Of a stretch of 64,000 bases of DNA, positions 1 to 63,570 are shown in pieces. Made by a program: the position numbers and the translations under genes. The DNA is from Octopus bimaculoides (lineage: Eukaryota): contig NC_068983.1 of the NCBI RefSeq assembly GCF_001194135.2, forward strand, positions 98,752,908 to 98,816,907, read 5' to 3'. The notes under the pieces were generated by a model. That model was given only the letters and a program-made list of their open reading frames with translations, ran no database searches and was not told where the DNA came from. Each line of letters opens with the position of its first letter. The stretch's first letter is position 1.

Positions 1-48
1 ATTATTATTTTTATCATCATCATCATCATTATCATTTTCATTTTCATT

Positions 49-262
49 AACGTGGCGAGCTGGCAGAACCATTAACACACTGGGCAAAAATACTTAGTGG
101 CATTTAGTTTGTCTTTATGTTCTGAGTTCAAATTCTGCCAAGGTTGACTTTGCCTTTCATCCTTTCTGGGTCAATGAAATAAGTACCAGTTGAGTAGTAG
201 GGTCGATGTATTCGACTCATCCCTCAAAACTGCTGGCCTTGTGCCAAAATTTGAAATCATTA
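49..262 (+). mobile_element. Second SINE family (GGCGAGCTGGCAG...GAGTTCAAATTC...AAGTACCAGTT)
   Basis: Box A/B-like motifs and (ATT)n tail. Repeated at ~283-500, 8456-8622(-), 11168-11386, 18128-18650, 32150-32362, 63365-63545(-) and 63795-63965(-). Confidence 0.8.
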
Positions 263-10924: not shown

Positions 10925-12245
10925 TGTGTGTGTGTTTGTTCTCCCACCATCACTTGACAACTGATGCTGGTGTGTTTATGTCTCCGTAATTCAGTGGTTC
11001 AGTTAAAGAGACCAATAGAATAAGTACTAGGCTTAAAAAGAATAAGTGCTGGGTTCAATTTCTTTGACTAAACCTCTGTAAGGCAGTGCTCCAGCATGGC
11101 CACAGTCAAATGATTGAAACAGGTAAAAAAAATAAACGAATACATTAGATAGTGTCCTAATTACACTATAAGGCAGTGGTTTAGGAGAATTGCTTCAGCA
11201 TTGGACAAAAAGGCTTAGAAGCATTTCATCCATCGTCATATTCTGAGTTCAAATTCCACCAAGGTTGACTTTGCCTTTCATCCTTTCAGGGTCGATAAAA
11301 TAAGTACCAGTTGAACATTTGGGTCAATGTAATCGACTAACCCCACTCCCCTGAAATTGCTGGCCTTGTGCCAAAATTTTAAACCAGTATATGTTCCAGT
11401 TTTTTATATTCTGTGATCAAATCTGGTTGAGATCAGCCACGCTTTTCATATTGTCCAGTGTCAATAAAATAATATGCCAGTCCAGAGCAGCAGACTGGTA
11501 CATTGATTGGCAGAGTGTTGGGACATACTGCCTTGTGGTGTCTGTCTCAGTTATTTATAACTTGTGCCAAGCTATGCTGGCTCTTGACTTTCTCAGTGAT
11601 GTGGAGGGTGGAAGAGTTCAAATGTGAGACTTCCAAGAAAAAGAAGAAAAAAAAAAAGACAAACACATTGCCCAGGTGTGCATCCTGGAGAAGAACTTTC
11701 TAGTCTAGATGCAACATGGTCAGCTCTGATTAATGTAGGTCTTAGATCTGTTGGATCAGGGCTGACTTACAGCTAAACAATGACTATCTTAATCAACAGA
11801 GATCAGCAGCATGCTCAGATGTGTAATAGATATAAAAACACAGACACAGACATGCACACACACTCACTCATTCACACACAGTCGTCGTCATTGTCATCAT
11901 CATTATCATCATCATCATTTTAATGTCCACTTTTCCATACTTGCATGTGTTAGATGGAGCAGCCTAATGTTCTTGCAGAATATTGAAAATGAATACGACA
12001 CACTTTGCATGATGTAATGTCAAGACAAGGAGACAAACATACACATATACATGACGGGCTTCCTTCAGTTTTCATCAACCAAATCCACTCCTGAGTTGGC
12101 CTAGGGATATAATAAAAGACACTTGTCCAAGGTACCATGCAGTGGGACTAAACTCAGAATAATGTAGTTGGGAAGCAAACTTCCTCTTATCAAACGACAA
12201 TGCCTGTGTCTACACATGCACACACAAACACATATATATGGTATA

Positions 12246-17816: not shown

Positions 17817-17977
17817 CATTTTCGTGTGTTAAGTTGAGCAGAACACGTAAAATGGCCAGCATGCAACTGAAGATAATCCAGCCATTGGACTCCTTATCCA
17901 ATGAACTTTCACTCGGTCGATCAGGATCATCCCGCAAAGGAAAGTTAGAAATCGTACTCTGACAATGCCGCAAAGTT
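17817..17977 (-). CDS. WAPL: WAPL coding exon (161 nt, phase 2-1)
   Basis: Long polypyrimidine tract then ctatccAG, donor GTAAGT. Encodes TLRHCQSTISNFPLRDDPDRPSESSLDKESNGWIIFSCMLAILRVLLNLTHEN, matching CMRAIIGVLLNLTNDN. Confidence 0.93.
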
Positions 17978-18190
17978 CTGGATAGAAAAAAAAGAAAAAG
18001 AAAGAAGACATCTAGAATGGAACAACAATTGCAATAATTTCTGTCAAGATTTTAATAAACATTAGTTCTTTATCAAATATTTAGTCCTTGACAATGTATT
18101 GTTGATTTGTTATTATCTAGCCTCATTTAAGGTAGTGAGCTGCCAGAATTGTTAAGCACGCAGGGCAAAATGGTTAGCAGCATTTTGTCT

Positions 18191-18440
18191 TTTAGAAATA
18201 ATACATTTCTAAATCTCTCAGAGAGATTTATGCAGTAGTGATACGATGAAGTAGTTGTATGCTGTCAACTTAATGTGACAGTCCCCTGAAGGGAATAATA
18301 CTACTGTTGGTTAGACCTAGGAAGCTGCACAGCTATGTGTCAAGGCCGACAGGAAGCGGTGCAGCTTCCTAGGTCTAACCAACAGTAGTATTATTCCCTT
18401 CAGGGGACTGTCACATTAAGTTGACAGCATACAACTACTT
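18191..18440. mobile_element. Palindromic ~250 bp element, copy 1
   Basis: 84 bp perfect inverted arms at 18247-18330 and 18359-18442 (last 2 bp overlap the TSD), plus a ~56 bp unique left tail. Flanked by 13 bp direct repeat CAGCATTTTGTCT (18178-18190, 18441-18453). Inserted inside a SINE. Confidence 0.85.
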
Positions 18441-19014
18441 CAGCATTTTGTCTGTCTTTATGTTCTGAGTTCAAATTCTGCTGAAGTTGACTTTGTCTTA
18501 CATCTTTTTGGGGTTGATAAAATAAGTACTAGTTGAGTGCTGGGGTTGATGTAATTGACTTTCATAAGTACTAGTTGAGCACTAGGCTCAATGTAATTGA
18601 CTTAACCCCTCCCCCAAAATTGCTGGCCTTGTGCCAAAATTTGAGACCATTATTTAGCCTCGTGAAGCTGGTGGATTGGCAGAAATAGTAGAGTGTTCGA
18701 CAAATTGCTTTATATTATTTCTCCTGGCTCTTTATGGTCTGAGTTCACCATGGTCAATTTTGCCTTTCATACTTTCAGGGTCAAACAAACACAGGGGACG
18801 ATATTGTCAACTACTTCTCCCCTCAAGTTTCTATGCTTTGTGCCTAAGGTAGAAAATATTATCTAGATCTAAATCAGTTCTAGTCAAATGATATCTTTTC
18901 TTCTTCATTTCTCAGAAAGCGTTATTTTTATTTCAAGATGGTAGGATGTGGTTTTGAATGACATTTTGCTATTTCATCAGACTGAGTGATGCCGCCGCCA
19001 CCGCCACCACCGCC

Positions 19015-19046
<32 letters not shown>

Positions 19047-20093
19047 CAACAACACCACCACCACCACCACCACCACCACATTAGCTTGTGATTATGAGCA
19101 TAACATGTATACATATATTTAGTTGTAGAAAAACATGCCCAATGTATTCTACTCATGAAAGAACAACAAAAGAAACAACCAATATCATGGCAATAAAACA
19201 AGTTCTTCTTCTTCTTTGCCACTGCTGTCACTACTACCACCCACACCACTTACTTATGATTGGTGATTGAGAGATAAGAGAGTATCAGAAAGCATGACGA
19301 GGGAAGCAAAATCATAGTAGAGAGATTTAGTGATAGAGAGATGAGTAGCTGTGATAGAGCAACAGGAAGCTTAAACAGGCTTTACTGGCTAATATGCTTA
19401 AAAGTAGATATACATAACACACAATCTCCATCATTACCATTATTATTTGCTATGCCATGCTTGCAAGAGTGGGTGGGTCTTCTCCAGCACTGAGTTTCAC
19501 CAACTGCCATGATTCACTGTCATTTTTGTGAGGTCAGGTCTTCCTCACTGCATTACATCTTTTTAGTCATCTTTAACAGGATCTTGCTCAAGGTGCCACA
19601 CAGTGGGACAGAACCCGTAACCATGTGGTTGTTAAGCAAGCTACTTACCACACAGCCACTACTTTTTTGTGGCATTTCAAGCACGGTCATTTCCCTTATG
19701 GGTATACAGTTTTATCTTCCTATTTACCAAAACTTCACTAAGTTTATTTTGAGGGCTCACCATTCTAAGTTTTGCTTTCAATTATGAAATTTCTTCTCTA
19801 AATCTACAATAAATTCAGTTATAAGAATTTTCTCAATCTCCAGCTAAGTAAACCATCTCTTCATGCTACTTGGTATTGTTCTGCTCTGTACCCTTTCCTC
19901 CTGATTTTCCTAGTCTGTTTCCTCGCTTTTATAGCTCTGTGGCTGTGTGGTAAGTAGCTTGCTTACGAACCACAAGGTTCCAGGTTCAGTCCCACTGCAT
20001 GGAACCTTGGGCAAGTGTCTTCTACTATAGCCTCAACCAAAGCCTTGTGAGTGGATTTGGCAGGCAGAAACTGAAAGAAGCCCGTCGTATATA

Positions 20094-20135
<42 letters not shown>

Positions 20136-20993
20136 GTATATATGTATGTTTGTGTCTGTGTTTGTCCCCCCGACATCGCTTGACAACCGATGCTGGTGTG
20201 TTTACGTCCCCATAGCTTAGCGGTTCGGCAAAAGAGACCGATAGAATAAGTGCTAGGCTTACAAAGAATAAGTCCTGGGGTCGATTTGGTCGACTAAAGG
20301 CGGTGCTCCAGCATGGCCACAGTCAAATGACTGAAACAAAAGAGTAAAACAGTAATGCTCCACCACCACATTGCCTCCCAACTGGCTAGAAACTTGCAAC
20401 GGACACGGATCTATTCTGTAGCCCAAGGCAGGTTGACCTGTAAAAACTGCTAGTTTTCCTCTGCTATAAACTACCATCACCTCCTCCCACCTGTCATAAG
20501 CATCATCTAATATTTTTATGAATTTATAAGCAATCAAAAGCTCTTTCAGCTTCTTTGCGGAAAGTAAATTAAAATACAAAAAATACAGATAGAAACCTGA
20601 AGAATTCTCTATCCAGATATGAAATGATGGAATAAGAGGTTAGAAGTAGTTTTGTGGCTTTAACAGGTGCAGTGTATCAAACACTAAACAATTTGCCTTG
20701 AGTGGTTAAGATATGAAATCTATTCCAGATTATAACATAATGGTGGCGATGATGGTGACATTGTTATTTCAAATTCTCTGTAAGTATCAGTTCAAGTCTT
20801 AAAACCTCATCTTCACCAGATAAAGTACTTGATCGAACAATCCTGACAAATAATTAGAGTTGGAGGGAGAGGGCGGATGTTGGGTGACAAAACAAAACAG
20901 AACAAAAAAAAAAAAAAAANNNNNNNNNNAAAAAAAAAAAAAAAAAAAGAAAAAAATTTAAAAATCATGGAAACAAGTTTAATGACAACTTAC

Positions 20994-29341: not shown

Positions 29342-29958
29342 ATGAGCTTCTTTAAGTTTCCTTCCACCAAATCCACTCACAAAGCTTGGTTGGCTTGGGG
29401 CTGTAGTAGAAGACACTTTCCCAAGGTGTCACACAGTGGGACTGAACCCAGAATCATGTGGTTAGGAAGCAAGCTTCATACCACATTGCCACACCTGAGC
29501 CTGGAGCCACACCTATTTATACAATTTCCTCAACTATTGATAATTTTTCCAACATAGATAGATGGAAACTGACAAAACCTGTCATACATATATATCTGTG
29601 TGTGGGTGTCTGTGTTGTTTCCTACCATGACTTGACAACTGGTGTTGGTTGGTTTACCAAAGAACTAGTACCAGGCTTGAAAAATAAGAACAAGGGGTCA
29701 ATTTGTTTGACTAAACACTTCAAGGCAGTGCTCCAGCTTGGCTGTAGCCCAATGACTGAGACAATCAAGAGATAAGAGATAAATAGGTGCAAGCCTAGCT
29801 GTGTGGTTAAGACCCTCACTCTGCAACCATGTCTTGGGTTCAGTCCCACTGCACAACATCTTGGGCAAGTGTTTTCTACTTCTACTATATCCCTAGGCTG
29901 AACAATGTCTTGTGAGTGAATTTGGTAGACAGAAACTAAAAGAAGTCTGTCATATATA

Positions 29959-30014
<56 letters not shown>

Positions 30015-31841
30015 CATTTGTCACCCTACTTCTCACTATTTGACAAGTGGTGTTGATTTGTAACTTAGCAGTTCAGCAAAAGATATTAACAAAATAAGTC
30101 CCAGATATGAAATAGGAAAAAAAAAAAAAAAAAATGGCATCCCAGTATGGCCACAATTCAATGATAGAAACAAGTAAAACACAAAAGCTAAAAAAAAATA
30201 ACACCATACACACAGAAAAACACCACTTAAACTTAACTAAAAATAATCTGTAAGAATGAACTGTCATGTATTGAACTAATGAATATAACAAATGGTGTAT
30301 ATTTGTTAAATAATGAAAAACCGCCAATCACATGGCATTTATAAGTTTTATGTGGACCTGTCTGTTTTTTTTTTTTTAAATATATATTGCAATTAAAATA
30401 AACCGAGACACACAATTGATTCCATTGCTACAGGATCACAGTTGATGTTGTTACCCCTTTTTATACATTCTGCCATTGGTTGTGCTTCTGCTAAGGCGAA
30501 ATAGAAATTCACAGCTTTCAGCTATTTGATCCTTGTTCCTATACTGGTGCTTATGAAATACGCAAAATTACAAAACTCGACATGAACTGAGGATGCATTT
30601 TATAACCTGAAAGTTGTTGTTCAGCAGCAATTTAACTCTAACAGAGCAAGCTTATGATCAAAATTGATCCATCTATGACCACCCTCTCCTTATGTTTTTT
30701 TTTTCTTTTATGTCTTTTAAAGATGATAGTATGTGATTTCAATGAATAACTTCTATTTCTAATAGGTCAAGCAGCCACGTAGAGACTTACAAATTGGTTC
30801 AAAATTAGTGAGTACTAATAGATCAGTGCATGCATTAATACAATGACTCAGCAATTAACTGCTGTGGGAGGAGTGGGGGTGGAGAGCACTGTCATCTACT
30901 AATATAATCCCATTAGTAGATGATGGTGAATCATTATATTCATTATATCACAGTAGCAATTAGCCTTTCACCTCTCACATAAGAGGATATTGACATTAAA
31001 TGATGAACTGATACAGCGATCCTGTCATGCTATATAACTGAACACTGGCAATATAGAAATTTTTAACATATTCAGTAGGTATGGGTATGGGTATGTGGTT
31101 AAGAAACTTGCTTTGCAACCATGTGATTTCAGGTTCAATCTCATTGCATGGCACCTCGGGTAATTATCATCTGCTATAATCCCAGGCTGACCAATGCCTT
31201 GTGAGTGAATTTGGTAGACAGAAAACGAGGAAGACTGCTGCATTATATATATATACACACACATATATACATACACACACACACACATGTATGTAAGTAT
31301 GTCTATGTGTGTGTCTTTGTGTCTGTGTTTGTCCCCCCACCACTGTTTGACAACTGGAGTTGGTCTGTTTACGGTCTGTAAACATTCCCATGACTTAGTG
31401 TTTTGACAAACAGAGAGAGAGTGTTTTCAGACATGATATTCCTCAAGAAAGATTGGTATATAAACTTCTTTCTGCAGTTAAGGGTAATGAAATTTTCAGT
31501 GGTCATATCTGATTTCTGCGGTAAAAGAATTAACCCTTTTGATACCAACCGATCTGAGACCACTCGAAGTTCTATGACATAAAGTTACAGTTTTAACATG
31601 GTCTAAATTATAATCTTCCACCAAAATTTTATGTTAATTTGTTCCAGACTACAACTTATGAATGAAAAAGTTATTTTACTAAATTCTTCATTATTTAAAA
31701 AATTAAATGAAACAAACGCGGCATATGTTGACAGAAATATGGTAACAGAAGGGCTAAACTGATTAAGTATTACCTTGAGAAACAAAACATGAAAGAAAAT
31801 TTTTAAAAATAAGAAAAGAATTTGGAAGTGGAAATACTTAC

Positions 31842-32069: not shown

Positions 32070-32961
32070 CTAAAAGAAAACAAAAACAAGACTAAAAAAA
32101 CAACACGTACAAAACAACCCACTTTAGGACAAGTAATATCAATATTGATTTCTGGCAGAAATGTTAGCACGCTTAGTGGAATGCTTAGCAGTATTTTGTC
32201 TGTCTTTACGTTTTGAGTTCAAATTCTGATGAGGTCGACTTTGCCTTTCACCCTTTTGGGATCAATAAAATAAGTACCAGTTGTGTGTATTGAGGTTGGT
32301 CTAATCAACTGGACCCCTCTCCCAAAATTTTGGACCTTGTGCCAAGAGTAGAAAAGAATATCGATACTGATTTCTAATGCAGACAAAAGATAACACATTA
32401 GATAGAGAGAGAGAGAGAGAGAGAGAGAACAAGCAATTATATCAATAAAAGTAATTGACTGGTACTTATTTCATCATCCCTGGAAGGATGAAAGGCAAAG
32501 GTAATCGTGGCAAGATTTGAACTCAATGTAAAAATCATAACTAAATGCTGTAAGCCTTACACTCTACTTACTGATTCTATTAATCCAATACTCTTAAACA
32601 TAATACTGATTTCTAACATCGGCACAAAGCTAGAATTTTGGAGGAAACAGTAACGAATTAACTCAAACCCAGCATTATTTTTATCAACTCTGAAAGAATG
32701 AAAGATGAAGTTGACCTCAACATGATTTGAACTTAGAACGTAAAGGACAATGAGAATAACTACCACAAAGTATATAACTGTTCTGCCAATCCACAGACCT
32801 GAAGGTAATGCAGGTACAACATTAATGTTCTAGACACTGGTGGAGTGGAACCTATTATAATTTGTACAAATTTACAAGTAGGAACGTCAAACTCCTGTGG
32901 GCCACCAGACCAGTTTACTGGGCAGCTCTATTTTACAGTATTTTGCACAGTACAGTATTAA

Positions 32962-33370: not shown

Positions 33371-34136
33371 GTCAGTATAAACAAATCCAGCATATCTAGT
33401 CACTAAAAACTAGGCTCTGTCTGAGCATCATAATACACTCTAATATGTAAGTTCATTAGAACACATTCTAACATGCCAGCACATTTAGAAAAATACTCCC
33501 AATTATGTTTAGACATTAGAAGATATTTTCACATGCCTGTGGTTATAAGAAAATACTCCAGTTGCTAATGAAATACTTCCAACATATCTGGACACTATAA
33601 AATAGTCCTGCATGTTTGATAATACAAAATGTCTGATGGAGTATGGGAATCAAAATACAATATGAATAACAATGAGTTCCAAAATAGATTCACTTTAAAA
33701 TTTAGCATAATATGATTTGGTTTTGGCTGCAAGCAACATTATCAATGTCATCAACTGGTGCTCTATGTTAGCAAAATACTGCAACAGCAGCAGCTCAATG
33801 AGAACAGGACTTTAAAAAAACAATTTGTACATCTTTTATGTAGACATCATCTGTAACCATCAATGGTTACATTATAAATAAATAAAATAAAAATAAAAAT
33901 CCCTGTATAGTATGTAAAAAAAACATAAATGGGATGAGAGGAATAAAAGACAGACAAATGGGTAATGTGAGGTTCTAACAGGTAGACAAACACTTGAAAA
34001 ATAATGGACAAAGTGTAAACACAAAAGTTGAGCACAAGAAATAGTAAGCTGGAAAAAAAGAAAAGCAGTAGACTCCCATTTCAGGTGAGCCCTTTGTCAA
34101 AATAGAGTAACAATCAAGATAAAAGAAATGATACTT

Positions 34137-34384
34137 TTATAAATAATATATTTCTAAATCTCTCAGAGAAATTTATGCAGTAGCGATACGATGAAGTAGT
34201 TATATGCTGTCAACTTAATGTGACAGTCCCCTGAAGGGAATAATACTACTGTTGGTTAGACCTAGGAAGCTGCACCGCTTCCTGTCGGCCTTGACAGGAA
34301 GCAGTGCAGCTTCCTAGGTCGAACCAACAGTAGTATTATTCCCTTCAGGGGACTGTCACATTAAGTTGACAGCATACAACTACT
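34137..34384. mobile_element. Palindromic ~250 bp element, copy 2
   Basis: 92 bp arms (34195-34286 and 34293-34384, 3 mismatches) around a GGCCTT loop, with the same left tail as copy 1. Flanked by 12 bp GAAATGATACTT / GAATTGATACTT (34125-34136, 34385-34396). Confidence 0.85.
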
Positions 34385-35091
34385 GAATTGATACTTATTT
34401 GACGGTATGGTAATTTGATCTGCAATTTTTGATTAGGCATGCCATTCAGAAAGTCCTGTGAGGCCAGTGTTCACTCATGACTTCCCTACTGTTTTAATGA
34501 CAAGCAAAGACACCTTGGATAATGTAGTCCTTGACTGACTATGTCTGGCAGGTTAGTCAAGAGCTGTTAATATCTTTGATCCCTGAGGCTTGCTTTGTCA
34601 AGGCTGAGGTAGGGTTAAACAATACTAGCAACAACTATAAAACAATGTTAAAAGAACATACACTACTACAATCCAATGATTAAATCTCCGTCTTAGTTGG
34701 TTCAGAAAGCATTTCTATCAATTCACCAGTTCTGATAGTATAACTTTTTAGCATTCAGATTACTCTGTTAAATGTATTCTTTATTTATTCCAGTTGATTT
34801 GGCTAGAACTGGCCTCTCACACCCACTTTACAATGTCATTCCAAATATATATTATCACATCATTGAAATCTTGAATACAGGATTAATTCTAAACATTGTG
34901 AATAATTAAACATTATATTCAATAAAGAAATCTGAATGCTAAAGAGTTAATTACGCATTATCTTGTAGCTTCGAGAGTTCAGTAATGTGATTGTATAGTT
35001 TTAGAAGGGCATTGTATGGTAGGTGTGAGGGGTTGAATCTGGCTGGTTTGAACATAAAACATGCAGAATATTTGGACCTGATATGGCCAGT

Positions 35092-35514: not shown

Positions 35515-35755
35515 GCATGGGTGCTTTTACGTAACACCGAATGGGCACTTTTATGTAGCACCGAATGGGCACTTTTATGTGGCATCGAATGGGCACTTTT
35601 ATGTGGCACCGAATGGGCACTTTTACATGGTACTGAATGGTTGCTTTTATGTGGCACCAAATGGATGTTTTTACATGGCACTAAATGGGTGCCTTTATGT
35701 AGCACTGCATGGATGCTTTAATGTGGCACCAACTGGGTGCTTTTATGTAACACCT
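35515..35755. repeat. 24 bp minisatellite inside an RTE 3'UTR copy
   Basis: Unit TTTATGTGGCACCGAATGGGCACT, about 10 units. Confidence 0.88.
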
Positions 35756-36393: not shown

Positions 36394-37548
36394 TTACTAT
36401 CAGTTATTCTTTTATTTGTCTGTCATTTGACTGTGGCCATGCTGGAGCACCACTTTTAGTCGAGCAAATCGACCCCAGGACTTATTCTTTGGATGCCTAG
36501 TACTTATTCTATCGGTCTCTTTTGCCGAACCACTAAGTTACAGGGACGTAAACACAGCATTGGTTGTCAAGGGATGTGGGGGGGGGCATACAGACACCCA
36601 AACATATACACACACACACATATGCATATATACGATGGGCTTTTTTCAGTTTCCGTCTACCAAATCCACTCACAAGGCTTTGGTTGGCCCGAGGCTATAG
36701 TGGAAAGACACTTGCCTAAAGTGCCACACACTGGGAGTGAACCCAGAACCATGTGGTTTGTAAGCAAGCTACTTACCACACAGCCACTCCTATGCCTATG
36801 ATCAATATTCTTAGCTAGAATTACGATACCTCCCAGTAAAGACATGAAACTCAGTGTTTAGGGTGTTGAACTTATGATCATAAGATTGTGGTTTTAATTC
36901 CTGGATTAGGCAACATGTTGTGTTCTTGAGCAAAACACTTCATTTCATGTTGCTCCAGTCCAATCAGCTGGCAAAAATGAGTAATCCTGCAACGGACTGG
37001 ATTCAGGGAGGGAATATATATGCCATGAAACTGGCCCTTATGAGTTGGTATGACTCCAGAAGGTAACTTTACTTTACCATAAGGTGTTGCTTTGAGAGTT
37101 TCTCTTGTATAAGAATAGATCAATATGGCTAGTTGTAACTATAACAACATGTATCTTTGAGAGCTTGTGTCAGATGTAGCTATAAGCACTAATGTTAGTT
37201 ATTATGAGCACTTATGACTGTTGTAACTATGATCAATACTATGATTGATACTGCCAGATATAACCATAATGTCTTATCAGATGTAGCTTTGGTCAAAACT
37301 GTCTGTAAAAACCTTGCCAAAACTGACCTTGCCTGTCCTCATGTCACGTAAAAAGCACTCTGTCCACTCTATGGAGTGGTCGGTGTTAGGAGGGGTATTC
37401 AGCCATAAAAACCATGCCAAAATAGACACAGATGTCTGGTGTAGTCTTCTGCCTGGCCAGCTCTTGTTGAACTGTTCAACTCATGCCAGCATGGAAGGCA
37501 GACATTAAACAATGATGGTGATGCTGATGATGAATATTGGGTTCTGAC

Positions 37549-48423: not shown

Positions 48424-49033
48424 CTGTGGTTCTCAACCCTTTTTTTGCCTAAGGGCCCCTTTGATTCCTATTTTAATTTAATGGATCTCCATAGCTATTC
48501 AATGCTCTCTTTACTCTTTTATTCTTTTACTTGTTGCAGTCATTTGACTGTGGCCATGCTGGAGCATCGCCTTTAGTCGAGCAAATCGACCCCAGGACTT
48601 ATTCTTTGGAAACCTAGTACTTATTCTATCGGTCTCTTTTGCCGAACTGCTAGGTTACGGGGACGTAAACACACCAGCATCGGTTGTCAAGCGATGTTGG
48701 GGGGACAAACATATACACACACACACATATATATATACATATATACGACGAGCTTCTTTCAGTTTCCTTCTGCCAAATCCACTCACAAGGCTTTGGTCGG
48801 CCCGAGACTATAGTAGAAGACACTTGCCCAAGGTGTCACACAGTGGGAATGAACCCAGAACCATGCGGTTGGTAAGCAAGCTACTTACCACACAGCCACT
48901 CCTGCATGTATAAAAAAAAAATCCTAAGGTATTTTTATGATTAAATATTTTGCGTATTGTAAATGTATAAGCAACTTAATACAGATAAATTTTAACAGCA
49001 AAATCTTATATGAACCCTGGTTGAGAAGCACTC
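48424..49033. mobile_element. hAT MITE of the same family, interrupted by a SINE (~48512-48906)
   Basis: Ends CTGTGGTTCTCAACC ... GGTTGAGAAGCACTC. 8 bp TSD TTATAAAT/TTCTAAAT (7/8). Confidence 0.75.
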
Positions 49034-54944: not shown

Positions 54945-56418
54945 CAGGGGTTGGACAAAATAACAGAAACACCTAGCATCATGATTTTGAAATATCTATA
55001 AAATCGTCAAAAGCTTGTTTATTTTTATGTTTTTTGATTTATTATTAGTGTTGCTTAATATGTTTTGCTAAAATTGCAGTTTCTTTTCAGACATCATCAG
55101 AAAAAGGTAATTAAAATTCATTAAAATGACAGATCTATCGGACTTTCAAAGAGGTCAAACTGTTGGTGCTCATATGGCAGGCGTTAGAGTAACGAAAACA
55201 GCTGAAATGTTTGGTGTATCAAGAAGTACCGTCTCGAAAGTAATGACAGCCTTTGAGAAAGATGGAAANNNNNNNNNNTATTAGTGTTGCTTAATATGTT
55301 TTGCTAAAATTGCAGTTTCTTTTCAGACATCATCAGAAAAAGGTAATTAAAATTCATTAAAATGACAGATCTATCGGACTTTCAAAGAGGTCAAACTGTT
55401 GGTGCTCATATGGCAGGCGTTAGAGTAACGAAAACAGCTGAAATGTTTGGTGTATCAAGAAGTACCGTCTCGAAAGTAATGACAGCCTTTGAGAAAGATG
55501 GAAAAACCTTGTCGTTGAAACAAAACTCCAGAAGAAAACCAAAACTTTCAGATAGGGACTGTTGGACTCATACGCGAATCGTTAGAAAGGATCACAAAAG
55601 TACACCCAAAGAGCCAAGTTTCCACAAAAACTGTCTGCCGGGAGCTGCACAAAGCTGGATTTCACTGGAGAGCTGCAATTAGGAAACCACTACTTTCAAA
55701 AACAAACATTGCAAAGCGTTTAGAGTGGAGTAAAAACCTACAGAATTGGTCCCTAGAGGAGTGAAAGAATGTCATTTTCTTGGACGAGCCATCCTTTACC
55801 TTATTTCCGACCACTGGCCGAGTATACGTGTGGAGACAGCCAAAAGAAGCATTTGACCCAGACTGCCTTCTTCCAACAGTTAAACATGGAGGATGATCTG
55901 TGATGATCAGGTGGGGCTATATCTTGAAAATCCGCCGGGGTAATGGTTTCCCTTCATGGAAGAATTAATAGTAAAGACTATTAAAGCATTTTATCTGATC
56001 AAATTCATCCTATGGTTGTGGAACTGTTTCTGGAGGGAAATGCAATCTTTCAGGATGATAATGCACCAATTCACACAGCTAAAGTTGTTATTGAATGACA
56101 CGAGGAACATTCTAGTGAAGTTAAACATCTTACTTATCTGGCCACCACAGTCCCCAGATCTCAATATTATTGAACATTTATGGTGCATTTTAGAAAGACA
56201 AATAAGGAGTCGATATCCTTCACGATCATCACTACAAGAGTTGGAGACTGTTTTAGCTGAAGAATGGACAAAAACTTCTTTGGAAACAATTTGAACTTTG
56301 CACGAGTCCATACCTCATAGAATTCAAGCTGCAATTACTGCCAAAGGCGGTGCTACCCTATATCAAAATAGATTTGTTTGAAATTTTAAGGTGTTTCCAT
56401 TATTTTGTCCAACCCCTG
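54945..56418 (+). mobile_element. Tc1-type DNA transposon with degenerate transposase and DD36E spacing
   Basis: 29 bp TIRs CAGGGGTTGGACAAAATAA(CA/TG)GAAACACC (27/29 match), TA at both ends. Transposase starts MTDLSDFQRGQTVGAHMAG (55362) and includes FQDDNAPIH...WPPQSPDLNIIEHLW, with stops and frameshifts. Confidence 0.93.
55362..56365 (+). pseudogene. Disrupted Tc1-family transposase
   Basis: HTH N-terminus (GVSRSTVSKVM...RRKPKLSDRD), FLDEPSFTLFPTTGRVYVWR, FQDDNAPIH and WPPQSPDLNIIE fall in different frames with in-frame stops. Confidence 0.9.
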
Positions 56419-59670: not shown

Positions 59671-62113
59671 AGTGATACTATTTCAAAAATAACTGCTTTC
59701 TATCTTGTGAACTTCGTTCTCAGGAGAGATAAGTTAGTGTTGTCTTGTCTAATAGCAATAGCAAACAGAACACAGACTATATTGGGGATGGTGTATAGAA
59801 ACAATAACTTGTATTATGAATTTAGAGGCGAGACACGAGGATAATACAACGTGCATTAATAACAGTTTATCATGCAATATTCATGGATGGAAGAAGAAAG
59901 TGAAAAAAAAAATCATTGATATGAGTAGGATTATAGGAAATGGAGAAAGATGTAATGGAATCTACAATTGCAGTAGTGATAGTGTGACAGCTGCAACACA
60001 GCAGCAGTAGCAACAAGAACAGCAGCAGTAGGAGCAACAACAACAGCAGCACCAGGCAGATGTTTGAGAAGCTGATGATGACATTCAATTGTTTTATTGA
60101 TGCAGATAATTGAACTGATAGGAAGAATAAGAGGGCAAGTCAGTAGCAGGAAAACAACTAGGTCTAAAGGTTCAATGGCCAGCATGTTGACAATGTGAGT
60201 GGGAAAGATGGGCATTTTAGTAGAGAGATTTTTTCTGCAAGGATTAGGTAAAAAAAGACCCCCCCCNNNNNNNNNNCCCTGCCCCACAAAAAGAAAAAAA
60301 AAATCTACTGAAAATAAATGAAGACATGGGATCATGGATGACAGCAAGGAGTTAAAAACAAAAACAAAAAAGTCACAGTGACATAGGAAAAAAATCTCAT
60401 TTCTACCCTTCAGTTTGTCCTAAATCAATATGCTCATAGGCTTAAGCCATTGTAGCCAGCCAAGTAGATAATCCAGACTTATTGCAACAATGACTTAAGC
60501 AAACTTGAAATGGGTTTTGCAGCTAGGAATTGAAAGGAGGAGGAGGGAGGGGAGGAGAAGAAGAAGAGGGAAGAAAGAGCCAAGATTCTAGTAAATGATT
60601 GGTGTACTTAGGAATTTGTGGCAACAGCAGTTTTGTGTCCCTAGATACCTAACACAAACTAGTAGTAGTAGCAGTAGTGCTGGTGGTAGTAAGGGCAGCA
60701 ATAGTAGTGACTGCAATGGTGGAGGTAGCAGTAGTAGTGGTGGTGCTAGTAGTAGCAGCAATAGTAGTGGTAGTAATGGTGGGAGTAGTAGTAGTAGCAG
60801 GAGCACGAGGAGTTTTTTTAAGCATACACTATTTCTATAATGGAATAAGAGATGTTGAAAGTAGAATTGTATGTTAACAGCGAGTACAAAGGTTACAATA
60901 TTGAACTCTGAGTAAATAAATGTACTAAATTCTGTTGACATGCCTGAATGTCTGCCATCAGAATGCATAGACAAACAAGGGATATTTTGCAATAACTTTC
61001 CAATAAGTCTCAGGTTCCATTCAAGTTGGAACATAGTAATTTGGAGTTTGGCCACTAGTCAGTCAGTTAGGGTACTGGCAGCATGTAAAAAGCACTCATT
61101 ACACACTTGGAGTGGTTGGCGTTAGGAAGGGCATCCAACCATAGAAACCACACTGACTCAGACTGGAGCCTGGTGCGGCTCACTGGCTAACCAGTTTCAG
61201 TCAAACTGTGTAACCCATGCCAGCATGGAAAGCAGACATTAAATGATGATGATGATGAAATCTAGCCATGAGTATCATTGTATATGTCATTGTTTTAACA
61301 TCCATCTTTCCATGCCAGCATAGGTTGGAAGGAATTTGTTGAGGCTGATTTTCTACAGCCAGACACCCATCCTGTCACCAACCTTCACTTGTTTTCAAGT
61401 AAGGTAATATTTCTCCATGACCAGACATGTTTTCCACGGAAGATTGGAAATAAAGGACACTGCTTGTGAAATGGTGATGCTTGCTTACAACAATCTCATG
61501 ATGTCAAGGCAAGGAGACAGTAAAACACACACAGAATATACAAGGAGTTTTCGTCAACTGATATAATGTAATAGGTAAGTACTATGAGTGCTCAGTTTGA
61601 TTTACCACTAAAACCCTGGCTTGAAACTGCTAATGGACCTCACTTGTAACTTATTTATTTGATCAATGAACTCATAATGCATACCTGTCTTACTCTGACC
61701 CTCCTTTCATTTTTGACAAACTGGAATATACTAATATCATTGACTAGAGATATTTCTTTGTTTTTATATCTCTCTGATTTTTCCCTCTTGGATGATGGAA
61801 TTTTTTTCCTATCTCCTGTTATGAGGTGTGGCTGTGTGGTAAGAAGTTTGCTTCCCATCCACATGGCTCCAGGTTCAGTCCTACTGCAAGCATCATGGAC
61901 AAGTGTCTTCTGCTACAGTCTTGGGCCGACCAAAGCTTTGTGAGTGGATATGGTAGACGGAAAGCCCATTGTATGTCTGTATGTCCATGTCTTTTGTGTT
62001 GTTGTCTACGTACCCGTGGCTTAATAGTTCGGTAAAAGACCCTGATAGAGGAAGTACCGGGTTTACAAAAAGTAGTAAGTATTGCCTTATAATAATAATA
62101 ATAATAATAATAA

Positions 62114-63350
62114 TACTCTAGCCGTCCCAGTTATAAGTTACAGATACAATATCCTTAACTGGACACTAAATGAACTAACGAAAATAGACACGAAAACAAG
62201 AAAAGTAATGACAGGATCTAGGATGCACCACCCAAGATCTGACATAGAAAGGTTATATATACAACGTATAGAAGATGGTAGAGGTCTTATACAGCTGGAA
62301 AACTATTATAAAATAACCACCATAGGACTGCAAAAATACCTACTTCAGAAGCAAGGAAAACTAATACAAATAGCCACTAAACATGAGCAAAACAAAAAAC
62401 TGTTTTCAGTATTCAAGGAAGCTGACAAATACAAACAAGAAGTCATACTACCTAACAAATACGAAGAAGAAGAAGAAGAAACAACAAAAGTTATAAAACA
62501 AATGAAATCCAAACTAAAACTAGAACAGCAACGGACCATGATAAAACGATGGCAAGAAAAGCCCCTACATGGTAAATACTGGGCTAAACTAAATGCAAAA
62601 GAAATAGACAGAGAAAAATCCCAGCAATGGTTGAGAAGCTCAGGACTCAAAGCAGAGACTGAAGAATTTTTAATTGCTGCACAAGACCAAAGCCTCTCCA
62701 CCAGAAATTACCAAAAACATATAATGAAAAGAAACATAACAAGTAACTGTAGTATATGTGGNNNNNNNNNNNNNNNNNNNNNNNNNNNNNNNNNNNNNNN
62801 NNNNNNNNNNNNNNNNNNNNNNNNNNNNNNNNNNNNNNNNNNNNNNNNNNNNNNNNNNNNNNNNNNNNNNNNNNNNNNNNNNNNNNNNNNNNNNNNNNNN
62901 NNNNNNNNNNNNNNNNNNNNNNNNNNNNNNNNNNNNNNNNNNNNNNNNNNNNNNNNNNNNNNNNNNNNNNNNNNNNNNCTAATTGATGTATCAATACCAG
63001 CAGATGACAATGTTTCTCTAAAAGAAATGGAGAAACTTTCAAAATACAAAGACCTGGAAATAGAGGTAACTTGAATGTGGAATCTAAAAACAGAAACAAT
63101 TCCTATCATAGTGGGCGCATTAGGTATGATAAAAAAATATTCAGACAAATACATAACAAAAACACCAGGACTTACAAATATATATAACATACAGAAAATT
63201 GCACTACTGGGCACTGCACACATCCTACACAAAACACTTTCAATACAGTAACCATAAGAGCATCACAACACATACCCAAGGCACACAGAGCTGCGCTCAG
63301 TAGTGAAGTGAAAGCACATTATATAAATAAAACTACTGAATAATAATAAT
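62114..63350 (+). mobile_element. 5'-truncated R4/Dong-clade (RLE endonuclease) non-LTR retrotransposon
   Basis: RT C-terminus (HHPRSDIERLY..GRGL, WQEKPLHGKY, AAQDQSLSTRNY), start of zinc knuckle (CSIC, then N gap), RLE motifs IDVSIP..EKLSKYKDL and PIIVGALG..QKIALLGTAHIL. One internal TGA at 63072, terminal TAA at 63249-63251. (TAA)n on both sides. Confidence 0.92.
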
Positions 63351-63570
63351 GATGATTTCAAACTTTGGCATAAGGCCAGCAATTTTGGGGGAGAGGATAA
63401 GTTGGTTACATTGACCCCAGTACTCAACTGGTACTTATTTTTATCTACCCTGAAAGGATGAAAGGCAAAGTTGACCTCTGAATGTAAAAATGGATGAAAT
63501 GCTGTTAAGCATTTTGCCCAGCATGCTAATGATTCTGCCGGGTCACTGCCTTAAATAATAATAATAATAA

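What the first reader, a model, noticed from the sequence alone, without database searches (positions are those of the whole stretch)
18191..18440. TSD-flanked element that is almost entirely one hairpin (copy 1)
Seen: a 250 bp insert splits a SINE and is flanked by a 13 bp direct repeat (CAGCATTTTGTCT). It consists of a ~56 bp tail (containing a small palindrome AAATCTCTC-A-GAGAGATTT) and an 84 bp perfect inverted repeat around a 28 nt centre. The inverted arms are not terminal, so this is not a normal MITE. Established: variable 12-13 bp TSDs fit target-primed retro-insertion, and Penelope-like elements often show an inverted pLTR plus a short tail. Inference: a non-autonomous, foldback retroelement. 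It would also form a perfect dsRNA about 270 nt upstream (transcript direction) of the 17817-17977 exon.
Basis: partly seen in the sequence, partly recalled or inferred. Interest (0 to 1): 0.7.

Follow-up and report, generated by a model that had tools for sequence, protein, structure and literature searches.

The report
Hairpin-shaped mobile element in octopus intron
A 250-base mobile element that is mostly one long hairpin has inserted twice into introns of an octopus WAPL gene; it most likely spreads through an RNA copy, and it is an unusual but not revolutionary kind of "jumping DNA".

Summary
Window 18191-18440 is a 250-bp insert that splits a tRNA-type SINE and is flanked by an exact 13-bp target-site duplication. 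The joined flanks align without a break to three other SINE copies. It has a 57-nt tail and a hairpin: 84 bp pair perfectly, and a 28-nt centre pairs on down to a 6-nt loop.

A second copy (34135-34384, 94% identical) has the same ends within 1 nt but a 10-bp duplication. Its loop is the reverse complement of copy 1's. Both copies lie in introns of an Octopus WAPL gene.

The element has no terminal inverted repeats, no ORF, no tRNA head, no Rfam family and no hammerhead ribozyme. Unequal duplications and missing terminal repeats argue for target-primed reverse transcription rather than a cut-and-paste transposon.

The closest published architecture is the Penelope-like insertion: head-to-head pseudo-LTRs, a tail on one side only, and short variable duplications. 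That link is untested because no autonomous partner or further copies could be retrieved. A LINE-mobilised hairpin retroposon remains a serious rival.

Verdict: a real, young, unclassified non-autonomous retroelement family of moderate interest. Its possible role as a double-stranded RNA in the WAPL transcript is inference only.

The parts
18178..18190 (.). Left copy of the target-site duplication of copy 1 (CAGCATTTTGTCT)
   Evidence: Exact 13-bp direct repeat. It occurs once in the intact SINE copies aligned.
18191..18247 (+). Tail of copy 1 (57 nt). It has two small overlapping hairpins: TTTAGAAAT-aatac-ATTTCTAAA (18191-18213) and TAAATCTCTC-a-GAGAGATTTA (18210-18230).
   Evidence: (I6). 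Both stems are perfect in copy 1 and each carries one mismatch in copy 2.
18248..18341 (+). Left arm of the hairpin, copy 1
   Evidence: (I3). Four clustered mismatches lie next to the centre at 18331 and 18335-18337.
18342..18347 (+). Loop of copy 1 (AAGGCC), the reverse complement of the copy 2 loop
18348..18440 (+). Right arm of the hairpin, copy 1. The element ends ...CAACTACTT.
18441..18453 (.). Right copy of the target-site duplication of copy 1
   Evidence: D5
34125..34134 (.). Left copy of the target-site duplication of copy 2 (GAAATGATAC)
   Evidence: It is 10 bp with one mismatch to the right copy.
34135..34384 (+). Copy 2 of the element: tail 34135-34194, arms 34195-34286 and 34293-34384 with 3 mismatches, loop 34287-34292 GGCCTT
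   Evidence: (I8). It is 94% identical to copy 1.
34385..34394 (.). Right copy of the target-site duplication of copy 2 (GAATTGATAC)
18125..18648 (+). Host tRNA-type SINE split by copy 1 (SINE proper is 18125-18190 plus 18454-18648)
17818..17977 (-). WAPL exon (residues 933-985 of the Octopus sinensis protein). Its acceptor site lies 213 nt from the element.

Best explanation
**What it is.** These are two copies of a young, short (about 250 bp), non-coding, non-autonomous retroelement family of an Octopus genome. It inserts by target-primed reverse transcription, which gives the variable 10-13-bp duplications.

**Layout.** Read on the minus strand, the unit is [inverted arm]-[6-nt loop]-[arm]-[57-nt tail ending ...ATTTCTAAA]. 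This is the layout described for Penelope-like element (PLE) insertions: two head-to-head pseudo-LTRs with a tail on one side only.

**Proposed mechanism (inferred, not shown).**
1. An RNA of about 150 nt (arm plus tail, minus-strand sense) is copied by a PLE-type enzyme supplied in trans.
2. The enzyme nicks and primes on both target strands from two internal start sites: one cDNA includes the tail and the other does not.
3. The two cDNAs meet head to head at the 5' end of the RNA and are joined. This builds the hairpin anew at each insertion.

This model would account for three things seen here: constant outer ends, the tail on one side only, and a centre that differs between copies (flipped loop, clustered mismatches).

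**Consequence.** In the WAPL pre-mRNA each copy would fold into more than 80 bp of near-perfect double-stranded RNA. That is a plausible substrate for RNA editing or RNA interference, which is also inference only.

**Confidence by level.**
- Mobile element insertion: about 0.95.
- RNA-mediated (retro) insertion: about 0.7.
- PLE-type machinery specifically: about 0.4.
For: **Shown here.**
- Insertion with an exact 13-bp duplication, and an empty site reconstructed from paralogous SINE copies.
- A second copy with the same two ends within 1 nt, but a 10-bp duplication.
- No terminal inverted repeat: the left end TTTAGAAATAATAC is unrelated to the reverse complement of the right end, AAGTAGTTGTATGC.
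- The loop is inverted between copies, and 4 clustered mismatches sit beside the centre in copy 1. The 82-92-bp arms otherwise carry 0-3 scattered, uncompensated changes.
- The half element (arm plus tail) folds on its own as a minus-sense RNA better than all 200 shuffles (z = -3.1).

**From the literature.**
- PLE inserts often carry an inverted pseudo-LTR next to the direct one, a 30-40-bp tail at one end only, palindromes at the inverted junction, 8-10-bp or no duplication, and pseudo-LTR-only derivatives mobilised in trans (PMC3846280, PMC8557442).
- A purified PLE protein cleaves and extends both target strands. It starts reverse transcription at two adjacent internal sites, and the sequence between them is the tail (PMC11167929).
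- Penelope-like families count among the recently active elements of Octopus vulgaris (PMC13282606).
Against: - No hammerhead ribozyme motif in either copy, even at E <= 10. Canonical PLE pseudo-LTRs carry one; only the Naiad and Chlamys clades lack it.
- The arm (about 95 nt) is shorter and the tail (57 nt) longer than published values.
- Neither insertion is in a microsatellite.
- No PLE, solo arm or tail-bearing longer element is present in the window, and none could be fetched. There is therefore no sequence link to any autonomous element.
- With two copies, the flipped loop could equally be a subfamily difference or a later DNA-level inversion.
- Both "short" arms stop at exactly the same base, 6 nt from the centre. 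That looks more like a fixed loop than a random junction.
Confidence: 0.4

Rival explanations
1. **LINE-dependent hairpin retroposon (SINE-like).** The whole 250-nt hairpin plus tail is transcribed from master copies. A LINE reverse transcriptase recognises the two small stem-loops in the 3' tail (minus-strand sense) and copies it. The hairpin is inherited, not rebuilt at each insertion. The flipped loop marks two subfamilies or a later inversion.
For: - Variable 10-13-bp duplications are typical of LINE endonuclease staggered cuts.
- Both copies share identical architecture and ends, which is most simply explained by a master copy that already has the hairpin.
- The ancestral tail had two perfect small stem-loops, as in LINE/SINE pairs with strict 3'-end recognition.
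- The minus-sense 3' end TTTAGAAATGTATTATT weakly resembles the 3' end of the abundant SINE, TTTGAAATCATTATT.
- Several LINE clades are recently active in Octopus vulgaris (PMC13282606).
Against: - No tRNA, 5S or 7SL head and no recognisable internal polymerase III promoter.
- No A-rich or microsatellite 3' end: the element ends in TAAA(A).
- The tail matches no LINE 3' end in the window.
- The resemblance to the SINE end is about 16 of 21 bases in AT-rich sequence and may be chance.
- This model does not by itself explain the flipped loop and the tail on one side only.
Confidence: 0.3
2. **DNA-level foldback or hairpin transposon.** The element would move as DNA, for example through a single-stranded or hairpin-ended intermediate. 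Its left terminal mini-hairpin and the large right hairpin would act as the two ends. The loop would flip as it does in hairpin-primed replication.
For: - Secondary structure at both termini.
- The loop occurs in both orientations.
- Both ends are precise within 1 nt.
Against: - No terminal inverted repeats.
- The duplication length differs between copies (13 vs 10 bp), whereas DDE transposases give a fixed length (established knowledge).
- Eukaryotic rolling-circle elements (Helitrons) make no duplication and have TC...CTRR ends inserted between A and T. None of these features is seen here.
- No transposase is associated with the element.
Confidence: 0.1
3. **Not a mobile element.** The hairpin would be an assembly artefact or a local palindromic duplication.
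For: The assembly has many gaps, and palindromes can be artefacts of some sequencing chemistries.
Against: - Two copies lie 16 kb apart in unrelated flanks.
- Each has its own duplication and private substitutions in both the tail and the arms.
- The empty site was reconstructed from paralogous SINEs.
- Other long inverted repeats in the window are microsatellites or gap artefacts.
Confidence: 0.02

Closest known systems
Penelope-like elements (PLEs): inverted pseudo-LTR plus tail insertions, and pseudo-LTR-only derivatives mobilised in trans
   Same: - Head-to-head inverted repeat with a palindromic junction.
- An extra tail at one end only.
- Short duplications of variable length.
- No terminal inverted repeats.
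- PLEs are present and recently active in Octopus (PMC3846280, PMC8557442, PMC11167929, PMC13282606).
   Different: - No ORF and no internal sequence at all.
- The arm is only about 95 nt, and the tail is 57 nt rather than 30-40.
- No hammerhead ribozyme.
- Not inserted in microsatellites.
- No sequence similarity to a PLE could be tested.
SINEs mobilised through a LINE-derived 3' tail (stringent LINE/SINE pairs)
   Same: - Short, non-coding and dispersed.
- Variable duplications.
- A structured 3' tail with stem-loops.
   Different: - No tRNA, 5S or 7SL head.
- The body is a near-perfect hairpin.
- No poly(A) or microsatellite end.
- No partner LINE identified.
Foldback elements and MITEs (DNA transposons with long inverted repeats)
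   Same: - Most of the element is one long inverted repeat.
- Small size.
- Flanked by duplications.
   Different: - The inverted repeat is not terminal on the left, where a 57-nt unpaired tail sits.
- The duplication length is not fixed (13 vs 10 bp).
LINE-1 twin-priming inversions
   Same: The 5' part is inverted relative to the 3' part, produced by priming from both target strands.
   Different: Twin-priming breakpoints differ between events. Here both copies have the same outer breakpoint within 1 nt and complete arm duplication.

Membership tests
Penelope-like element (non-autonomous derivative) | Pseudo-LTRs in direct or inverted arrangement; an inverted copy abutting head to head | tested here: met
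   Two arms of about 93 nt lie head to head around a 6-nt loop in both copies. Calling the arms pseudo-LTRs is an interpretation.
Penelope-like element (non-autonomous derivative) | [quoted passage not shown] | tested here: inconclusive
   A tail is present on one side only in both copies, but it is 57 nt rather than 30-40 (PMC8557442).
Penelope-like element (non-autonomous derivative) | Hammerhead ribozyme motif in the pseudo-LTR (canonical clades; absent in Naiad and Chlamys) | tested here: not met
   No hammerhead family in Rfam scans of either copy, both strands, at E <= 1 and E <= 10.
Penelope-like element (non-autonomous derivative) | Sequence identity of the arm and tail with the pseudo-LTR or 3' end of an autonomous element encoding a reverse transcriptase plus GIY-YIG endonuclease | not testable with these tools
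   No such element is in the window. No further octopus genomic DNA could be retrieved.
Penelope-like element (non-autonomous derivative) | Short target-site duplication of variable length, or none | tested here: met
   13 bp exact and 10 bp with one mismatch.
SINE (LINE-dependent) | Head derived from a polymerase III transcribed gene (tRNA, 7SL or 5S) with an internal promoter | tested here: not met
   ARAGORN finds no tRNA at standard settings. Rfam gives only sub-threshold microRNA-hairpin hits.
SINE (LINE-dependent) | 3' tail shared with a partner LINE, or an A-rich or microsatellite end | tested here: inconclusive
   No match to the tail in the window. The element ends in TAAA(A). There is a weak resemblance of about 16 of 21 bases to the local SINE 3' end. 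The genome-wide test was not possible.
MITE or foldback DNA transposon | Terminal inverted repeats at both ends | tested here: not met
   The left end TTTAGAAATAATAC is unrelated to the reverse complement of the right end, AAGTAGTTGTATGC. The left arm starts 57 nt inside the element.
MITE or foldback DNA transposon | Target-site duplication of fixed length | tested here: not met
   13 vs 10 bp, from two copies only.
Helitron or Helentron derivative | No duplication; insertion between A and T; 5'-TC and CTRR-3' ends with a 3' subterminal hairpin | tested here: not met
   A duplication is present and the ends are TTTAG... and ...CTACTT.
Known microRNA precursor families (Rfam) | Score at or above the family gathering threshold | tested here: not met
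   Best hits are let-7 at 41.2 bits vs a threshold of 53.5, and mir-31_2 at 38.8 vs 97. They differ between copies, so they are generic hairpin matches.

The most novel reading that the evidence does not exclude
The element may be a minimal unit mobilised by a Penelope-like enzyme. Its hairpin would be rebuilt at every insertion, because both target strands prime cDNA synthesis on the same RNA of about 150 nt, from two start sites. If so, the family is a natural genomic record of the two-strand, two-start-site priming so far seen only in vitro. It would also be a steady source of new long double-stranded RNA hairpins inside cephalopod genes, which are potential substrates for RNA editing or small-RNA production.
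Probability: 0.2. Interest if true: 0.6.

Novelty: new member of a known kind. Interest (0 to 1): 0.38.

Why it matters
- **Mechanism.** If the Penelope-like reading is right, this is one of the smallest units such enzymes can move. Its copies would show directly how the puzzling inverted-repeat-plus-tail structures arise, an open question in that field (PMC8557442, PMC11167929).
- **Host.** Each copy places more than 80 bp of near-perfect double-stranded RNA into a pre-mRNA. Here one copy sits 270 nt upstream of a WAPL exon. In an animal group known for very heavy RNA editing, this could affect editing, splicing or small-RNA production.
- **Annotation.** The family would be missed or misfiled as a MITE or "unknown" by standard annotation pipelines.
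- **If it is only a LINE-dependent retroposon.** Then it is an ordinary, if oddly shaped, repeat.

Tried and rejected
**Searches for more copies or a partner (all failed).**
- nhmmer with whole-element and tail profiles on the window found only the two copies, with no solo arm or tail.
- Exact-pattern scans of metagenome (two), viral and prokaryote collections gave 0 hits.
- The WAPL genes of O. sinensis and O. vulgaris were located, but they span 199 and 221 kb. That is too long for DNA to be returned, so the orthologous empty sites could not be checked.
- Twelve window ORFs were looked up by exact sequence and none is in the protein collection.
- Other look-ups returned only 1.5-2.2-kb contigs of distant species or of a LINE.
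- The first word-indexed protein search missed the WAPL protein although the exon is identical to it.
- Full-text and supplement searches for element k-mers gave no paper.

**Ideas rejected.**
- tRNA or mitochondrial-tRNA origin of the arm.
- A known RNA family or microRNA.
- A hammerhead ribozyme.
- An RNA-editing (A-to-G) footprint between the copies: the three G/A differences are G-to-A in copy 2 on the plus strand, and one of them is at a CpG.
- A paralogous empty site for copy 2: its flanks are unique in the window.
- SINE duplication lengths as a baseline: they are confounded by (ATT)n tails inserted into ATT-rich targets.
- The bacterial-type promoter and terminator scan is not meaningful for a eukaryote.

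Full report
**1. The observation**

CAGCATTTTGTCT occurs at 18178-18190 and again at 18441-18453, and these repeats bracket 250 bp. I removed the insert and one repeat copy and compared the joined flanks with the rest of the window. They align without interruption across the junction to three other copies of the same tRNA-type SINE (47-217, 32152-32305, 11186-11338). Each of those copies carries the 13-mer region once. This is therefore a real insertion into a SINE with a 13-bp target-site duplication. It could be 12 bp, because a T at the boundary is ambiguous.

Inside the insert, 18247-18330 pairs perfectly with 18359-18442, which is 84 bp. The outer 2 bp belong to the duplication. The 28-nt centre pairs further, with four mismatches, down to a 6-nt loop, AAGGCC, at 18342-18347. 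The fold is far beyond chance: -114.8 kcal/mol as DNA (z = -26) and -177.9 kcal/mol as RNA (z = -27).

It also contains a second palindrome at the very terminus, TTTAGAAAT-AATAC-ATTTCTAAA.

**2. A second copy**

BLAST of the element against the window finds one more copy at 34135-34384, 94% identical and in the same orientation. Homology between the copies stops at the same two ends, within 1 nt at each. Beyond the ends, copy 2 is flanked by GAAATGATAC and GAATTGATAC, a 10-bp duplication with one mismatch.

Profile searches find no further copy, no solo arm and no separate tail in the 64 kb. The other long inverted repeats in the window are microsatellites or gap artefacts.

The two copies have unrelated flanks, separate duplications and private substitutions in both tail and arms. 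This excludes an assembly artefact or a local duplication.

**3. Comparison of the copies**

- Differences in the arms are scattered and uncompensated: each affects one arm of one copy. This is what is expected from decay after insertion of a once-perfect hairpin.
- Where pairing lets the ancestral base be inferred, both small tail hairpins were perfect in the ancestor.
- Each copy carries roughly 2% private change. On the calibration used for Octopus vulgaris repeats (PMC13282606), that puts the insertions at a few million years old.
- The centre differs. Copy 2 reads ...CCTGTC-GGCCTT-GACAGG... and copy 1 reads ...GTGTC-AAGGCC-GACAGG.... The loop is inverted between copies, and copy 1 has four clustered changes in the 11 nt to the left of the loop.

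**4. Context**

The exon at 17818-17977 (minus strand) is real. It has a polypyrimidine tract, an AG acceptor and a GTAAGT donor. Its translation is identical to residues 933-985 of the wings apart-like protein (WAPL) of Octopus sinensis, XP_036357236.1.

Eight WAPL exons lie in the window at 95-100% amino-acid identity to that protein. The window therefore comes from an Octopus species close to, but not identical with, O. sinensis and O. vulgaris. Both element copies lie in WAPL introns. Copy 1 sits 213 nt (its stem 270 nt) upstream of the exon's acceptor in the direction of transcription.

**5. What it is not**

- It is not a MITE or foldback DNA transposon. It has no terminal inverted repeat: the left end is unrelated to the reverse complement of the right end, and the left arm starts 57 nt inside. 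The duplication length is also not fixed.
- It is not a Helitron-type element. The ends and the presence of a duplication do not fit.
- It has no ORF.
- It has no tRNA-like head.
- It matches no Rfam family above threshold. The sub-threshold hits are microRNA-hairpin models and differ between the two copies.
- It has no hammerhead ribozyme, even at E <= 10.

**6. Most likely mechanism**

Variable duplications, the lack of terminal repeats and precise ends point to target-primed reverse transcription by an enzyme supplied in trans. This is inference from established knowledge of retroelement integration.

The published architecture that fits best is that of Penelope-like elements:
- An inverted pseudo-LTR abuts the direct one head to head, often with a palindrome at the junction.
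- A short tail is present at one end only.
- Duplications are 8-10 bp or absent.
- Pseudo-LTR-only constructs are mobilised in trans (PMC3846280, PMC8557442).
- In vitro, a Penelope-like protein cleaves and extends both target strands and starts reverse transcription at two adjacent internal sites. The tail is the stretch between them (PMC11167929).

Applied here, the template would be an RNA of about 150 nt in minus-strand sense, 5'-AAGGCCGACAGG...arm...tail...ATTTCTAAA-3'.
1. It would be copied once from the plus-strand nick, giving tail plus arm.
2. It would be copied once from the minus-strand nick, giving the arm only.
3. The two cDNAs would meet and be joined at the 5' end of the RNA.

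This reproduces the one-sided tail, the constant outer ends and a centre that is made afresh at each insertion. The half element folds significantly on its own as an RNA (z = -3.1). Penelope-like families are among the recently active repeats of O. vulgaris.

Points against this reading:
- No hammerhead ribozyme.
- The arm is unusually short and the tail unusually long.
- There is no preference for microsatellite targets.
- In both copies the shorter arm stops at exactly the same base, which looks like a fixed loop rather than a random junction.
- Above all, there is no sequence link to any autonomous element.

**7. Rivals**

A LINE-dependent retroposon whose master copy already contains the hairpin explains the shared architecture most simply. 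It also fits the structured 3' tail. I noticed a weak resemblance between the element's minus-sense 3' end and the 3' end of the local SINE. However, there is no polymerase III head, no A-rich or microsatellite end and no partner LINE in the window. The flipped loop would also need a separate explanation.

A DNA-level hairpin transposon is unlikely because the duplications differ in length and there are no terminal repeats.

**8. Limits**

The decisive data are genome-wide copies, a partner element, orthologous empty sites and RNA data. None could be obtained:
- Public DNA collections reachable here hold no octopus match.
- The WAPL loci of two other octopus genomes are too long for retrieval.
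- The window's ORFs are not in the protein collection.
- My last protein search was wasted on a chimeric query.

All family-level statements therefore rest on two copies.

**9. Verdict**

This is a real, young, unclassified non-autonomous element with an unusual hairpin-plus-tail architecture. It is almost certainly mobile and probably RNA-mediated. It is best matched by, but not shown to belong to, the Penelope-like class. Interest is moderate.

Noticed in passing
window 14343-41730, minus strand: Eight consecutive exons of a WAPL (wings apart-like) gene: 41730-41617, 32069-31839, 28502-28389, 27685-27560, 21070-20993, 17977-17818, 16322-16206 and 14480-14343. They are 95-100% identical to Octopus sinensis and O. 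vulgaris WAPL, with a few substitutions (for example K for R in the 16322-16206 exon). The window is therefore a related but different Octopus genome.
   Followed up: partly
window 47-256, 282-487, 11169-11384, 18125-18648, 32152-32352, 63356-63555: An abundant tRNA-type SINE whose copies end in (ATT)n and sit in ATT-rich target sequence. This suggests a partner LINE that targets (TAA)n/(ATT)n repeats, possibly of the Dong/R4 type, which is reported as the most active LINE in O. vulgaris. It makes SINE duplication lengths hard to read.
   Followed up: partly
window 18191-18213 (minus-sense 3' end of the element) vs SINE 3' ends, e.g. 18630-18655: Short resemblance between the element's end, TTTAGAAATGTATTATT, and the SINE end, TTTGAAATCATTATT. 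About 16 of 21 bases match in AT-rich sequence. It may be chance or a shared 3' recognition motif.
   Followed up: no
window 18522-18603: A 42-bp tandem duplication (85% identical) inside the 3' half of the host SINE (D1).
   Followed up: no
window 62091-63356, plus strand: The 3' part of a non-LTR retrotransposon (C-terminal region of the reverse transcriptase with a zf-RVT domain), interrupted by a gap and an in-frame stop. It is 91% identical at DNA level to a contig assembled from run SRR9105631 that encodes a 684-aa protein. Its 3' end shares nothing with the hairpin element's tail.
   Followed up: partly
window 55347-56291, plus strand: Decayed Tc1/mariner transposase remnant: an N-terminal helix-turn-helix part and a C-terminal DDE_3 part, with a Pfam E-value of 6e-7.
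   Followed up: no
window 35517-35754: Minisatellite with a 24-bp period (9.7 copies, 79% matches) that keeps a long open frame (NGHFYVAP repeats). It is probably non-coding.
   Followed up: no
copy 1 vs copy 2 (18191-18440 / 34135-34384): The tail differs between copies at about 4 of 57 positions. The arms differ at only about 3 of 184, outside the clustered changes at the centre. All three G/A differences are G in copy 1 and A in copy 2. The numbers are too small for significance, but this could hint at stem maintenance or at deamination of a cDNA.
   Followed up: no
window, many places (e.g. 2478-2882, 19966-20322, 29625-30020, 36460-36798, 48548-48910): Another highly repeated element that abuts (CA)n/(TA)n microsatellites and gives recurring pseudo-peptides such as ...CPRCHAVGLNPEPCG...KLLTTQPLL in ORF lists. 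It was not classified.
   Followed up: no
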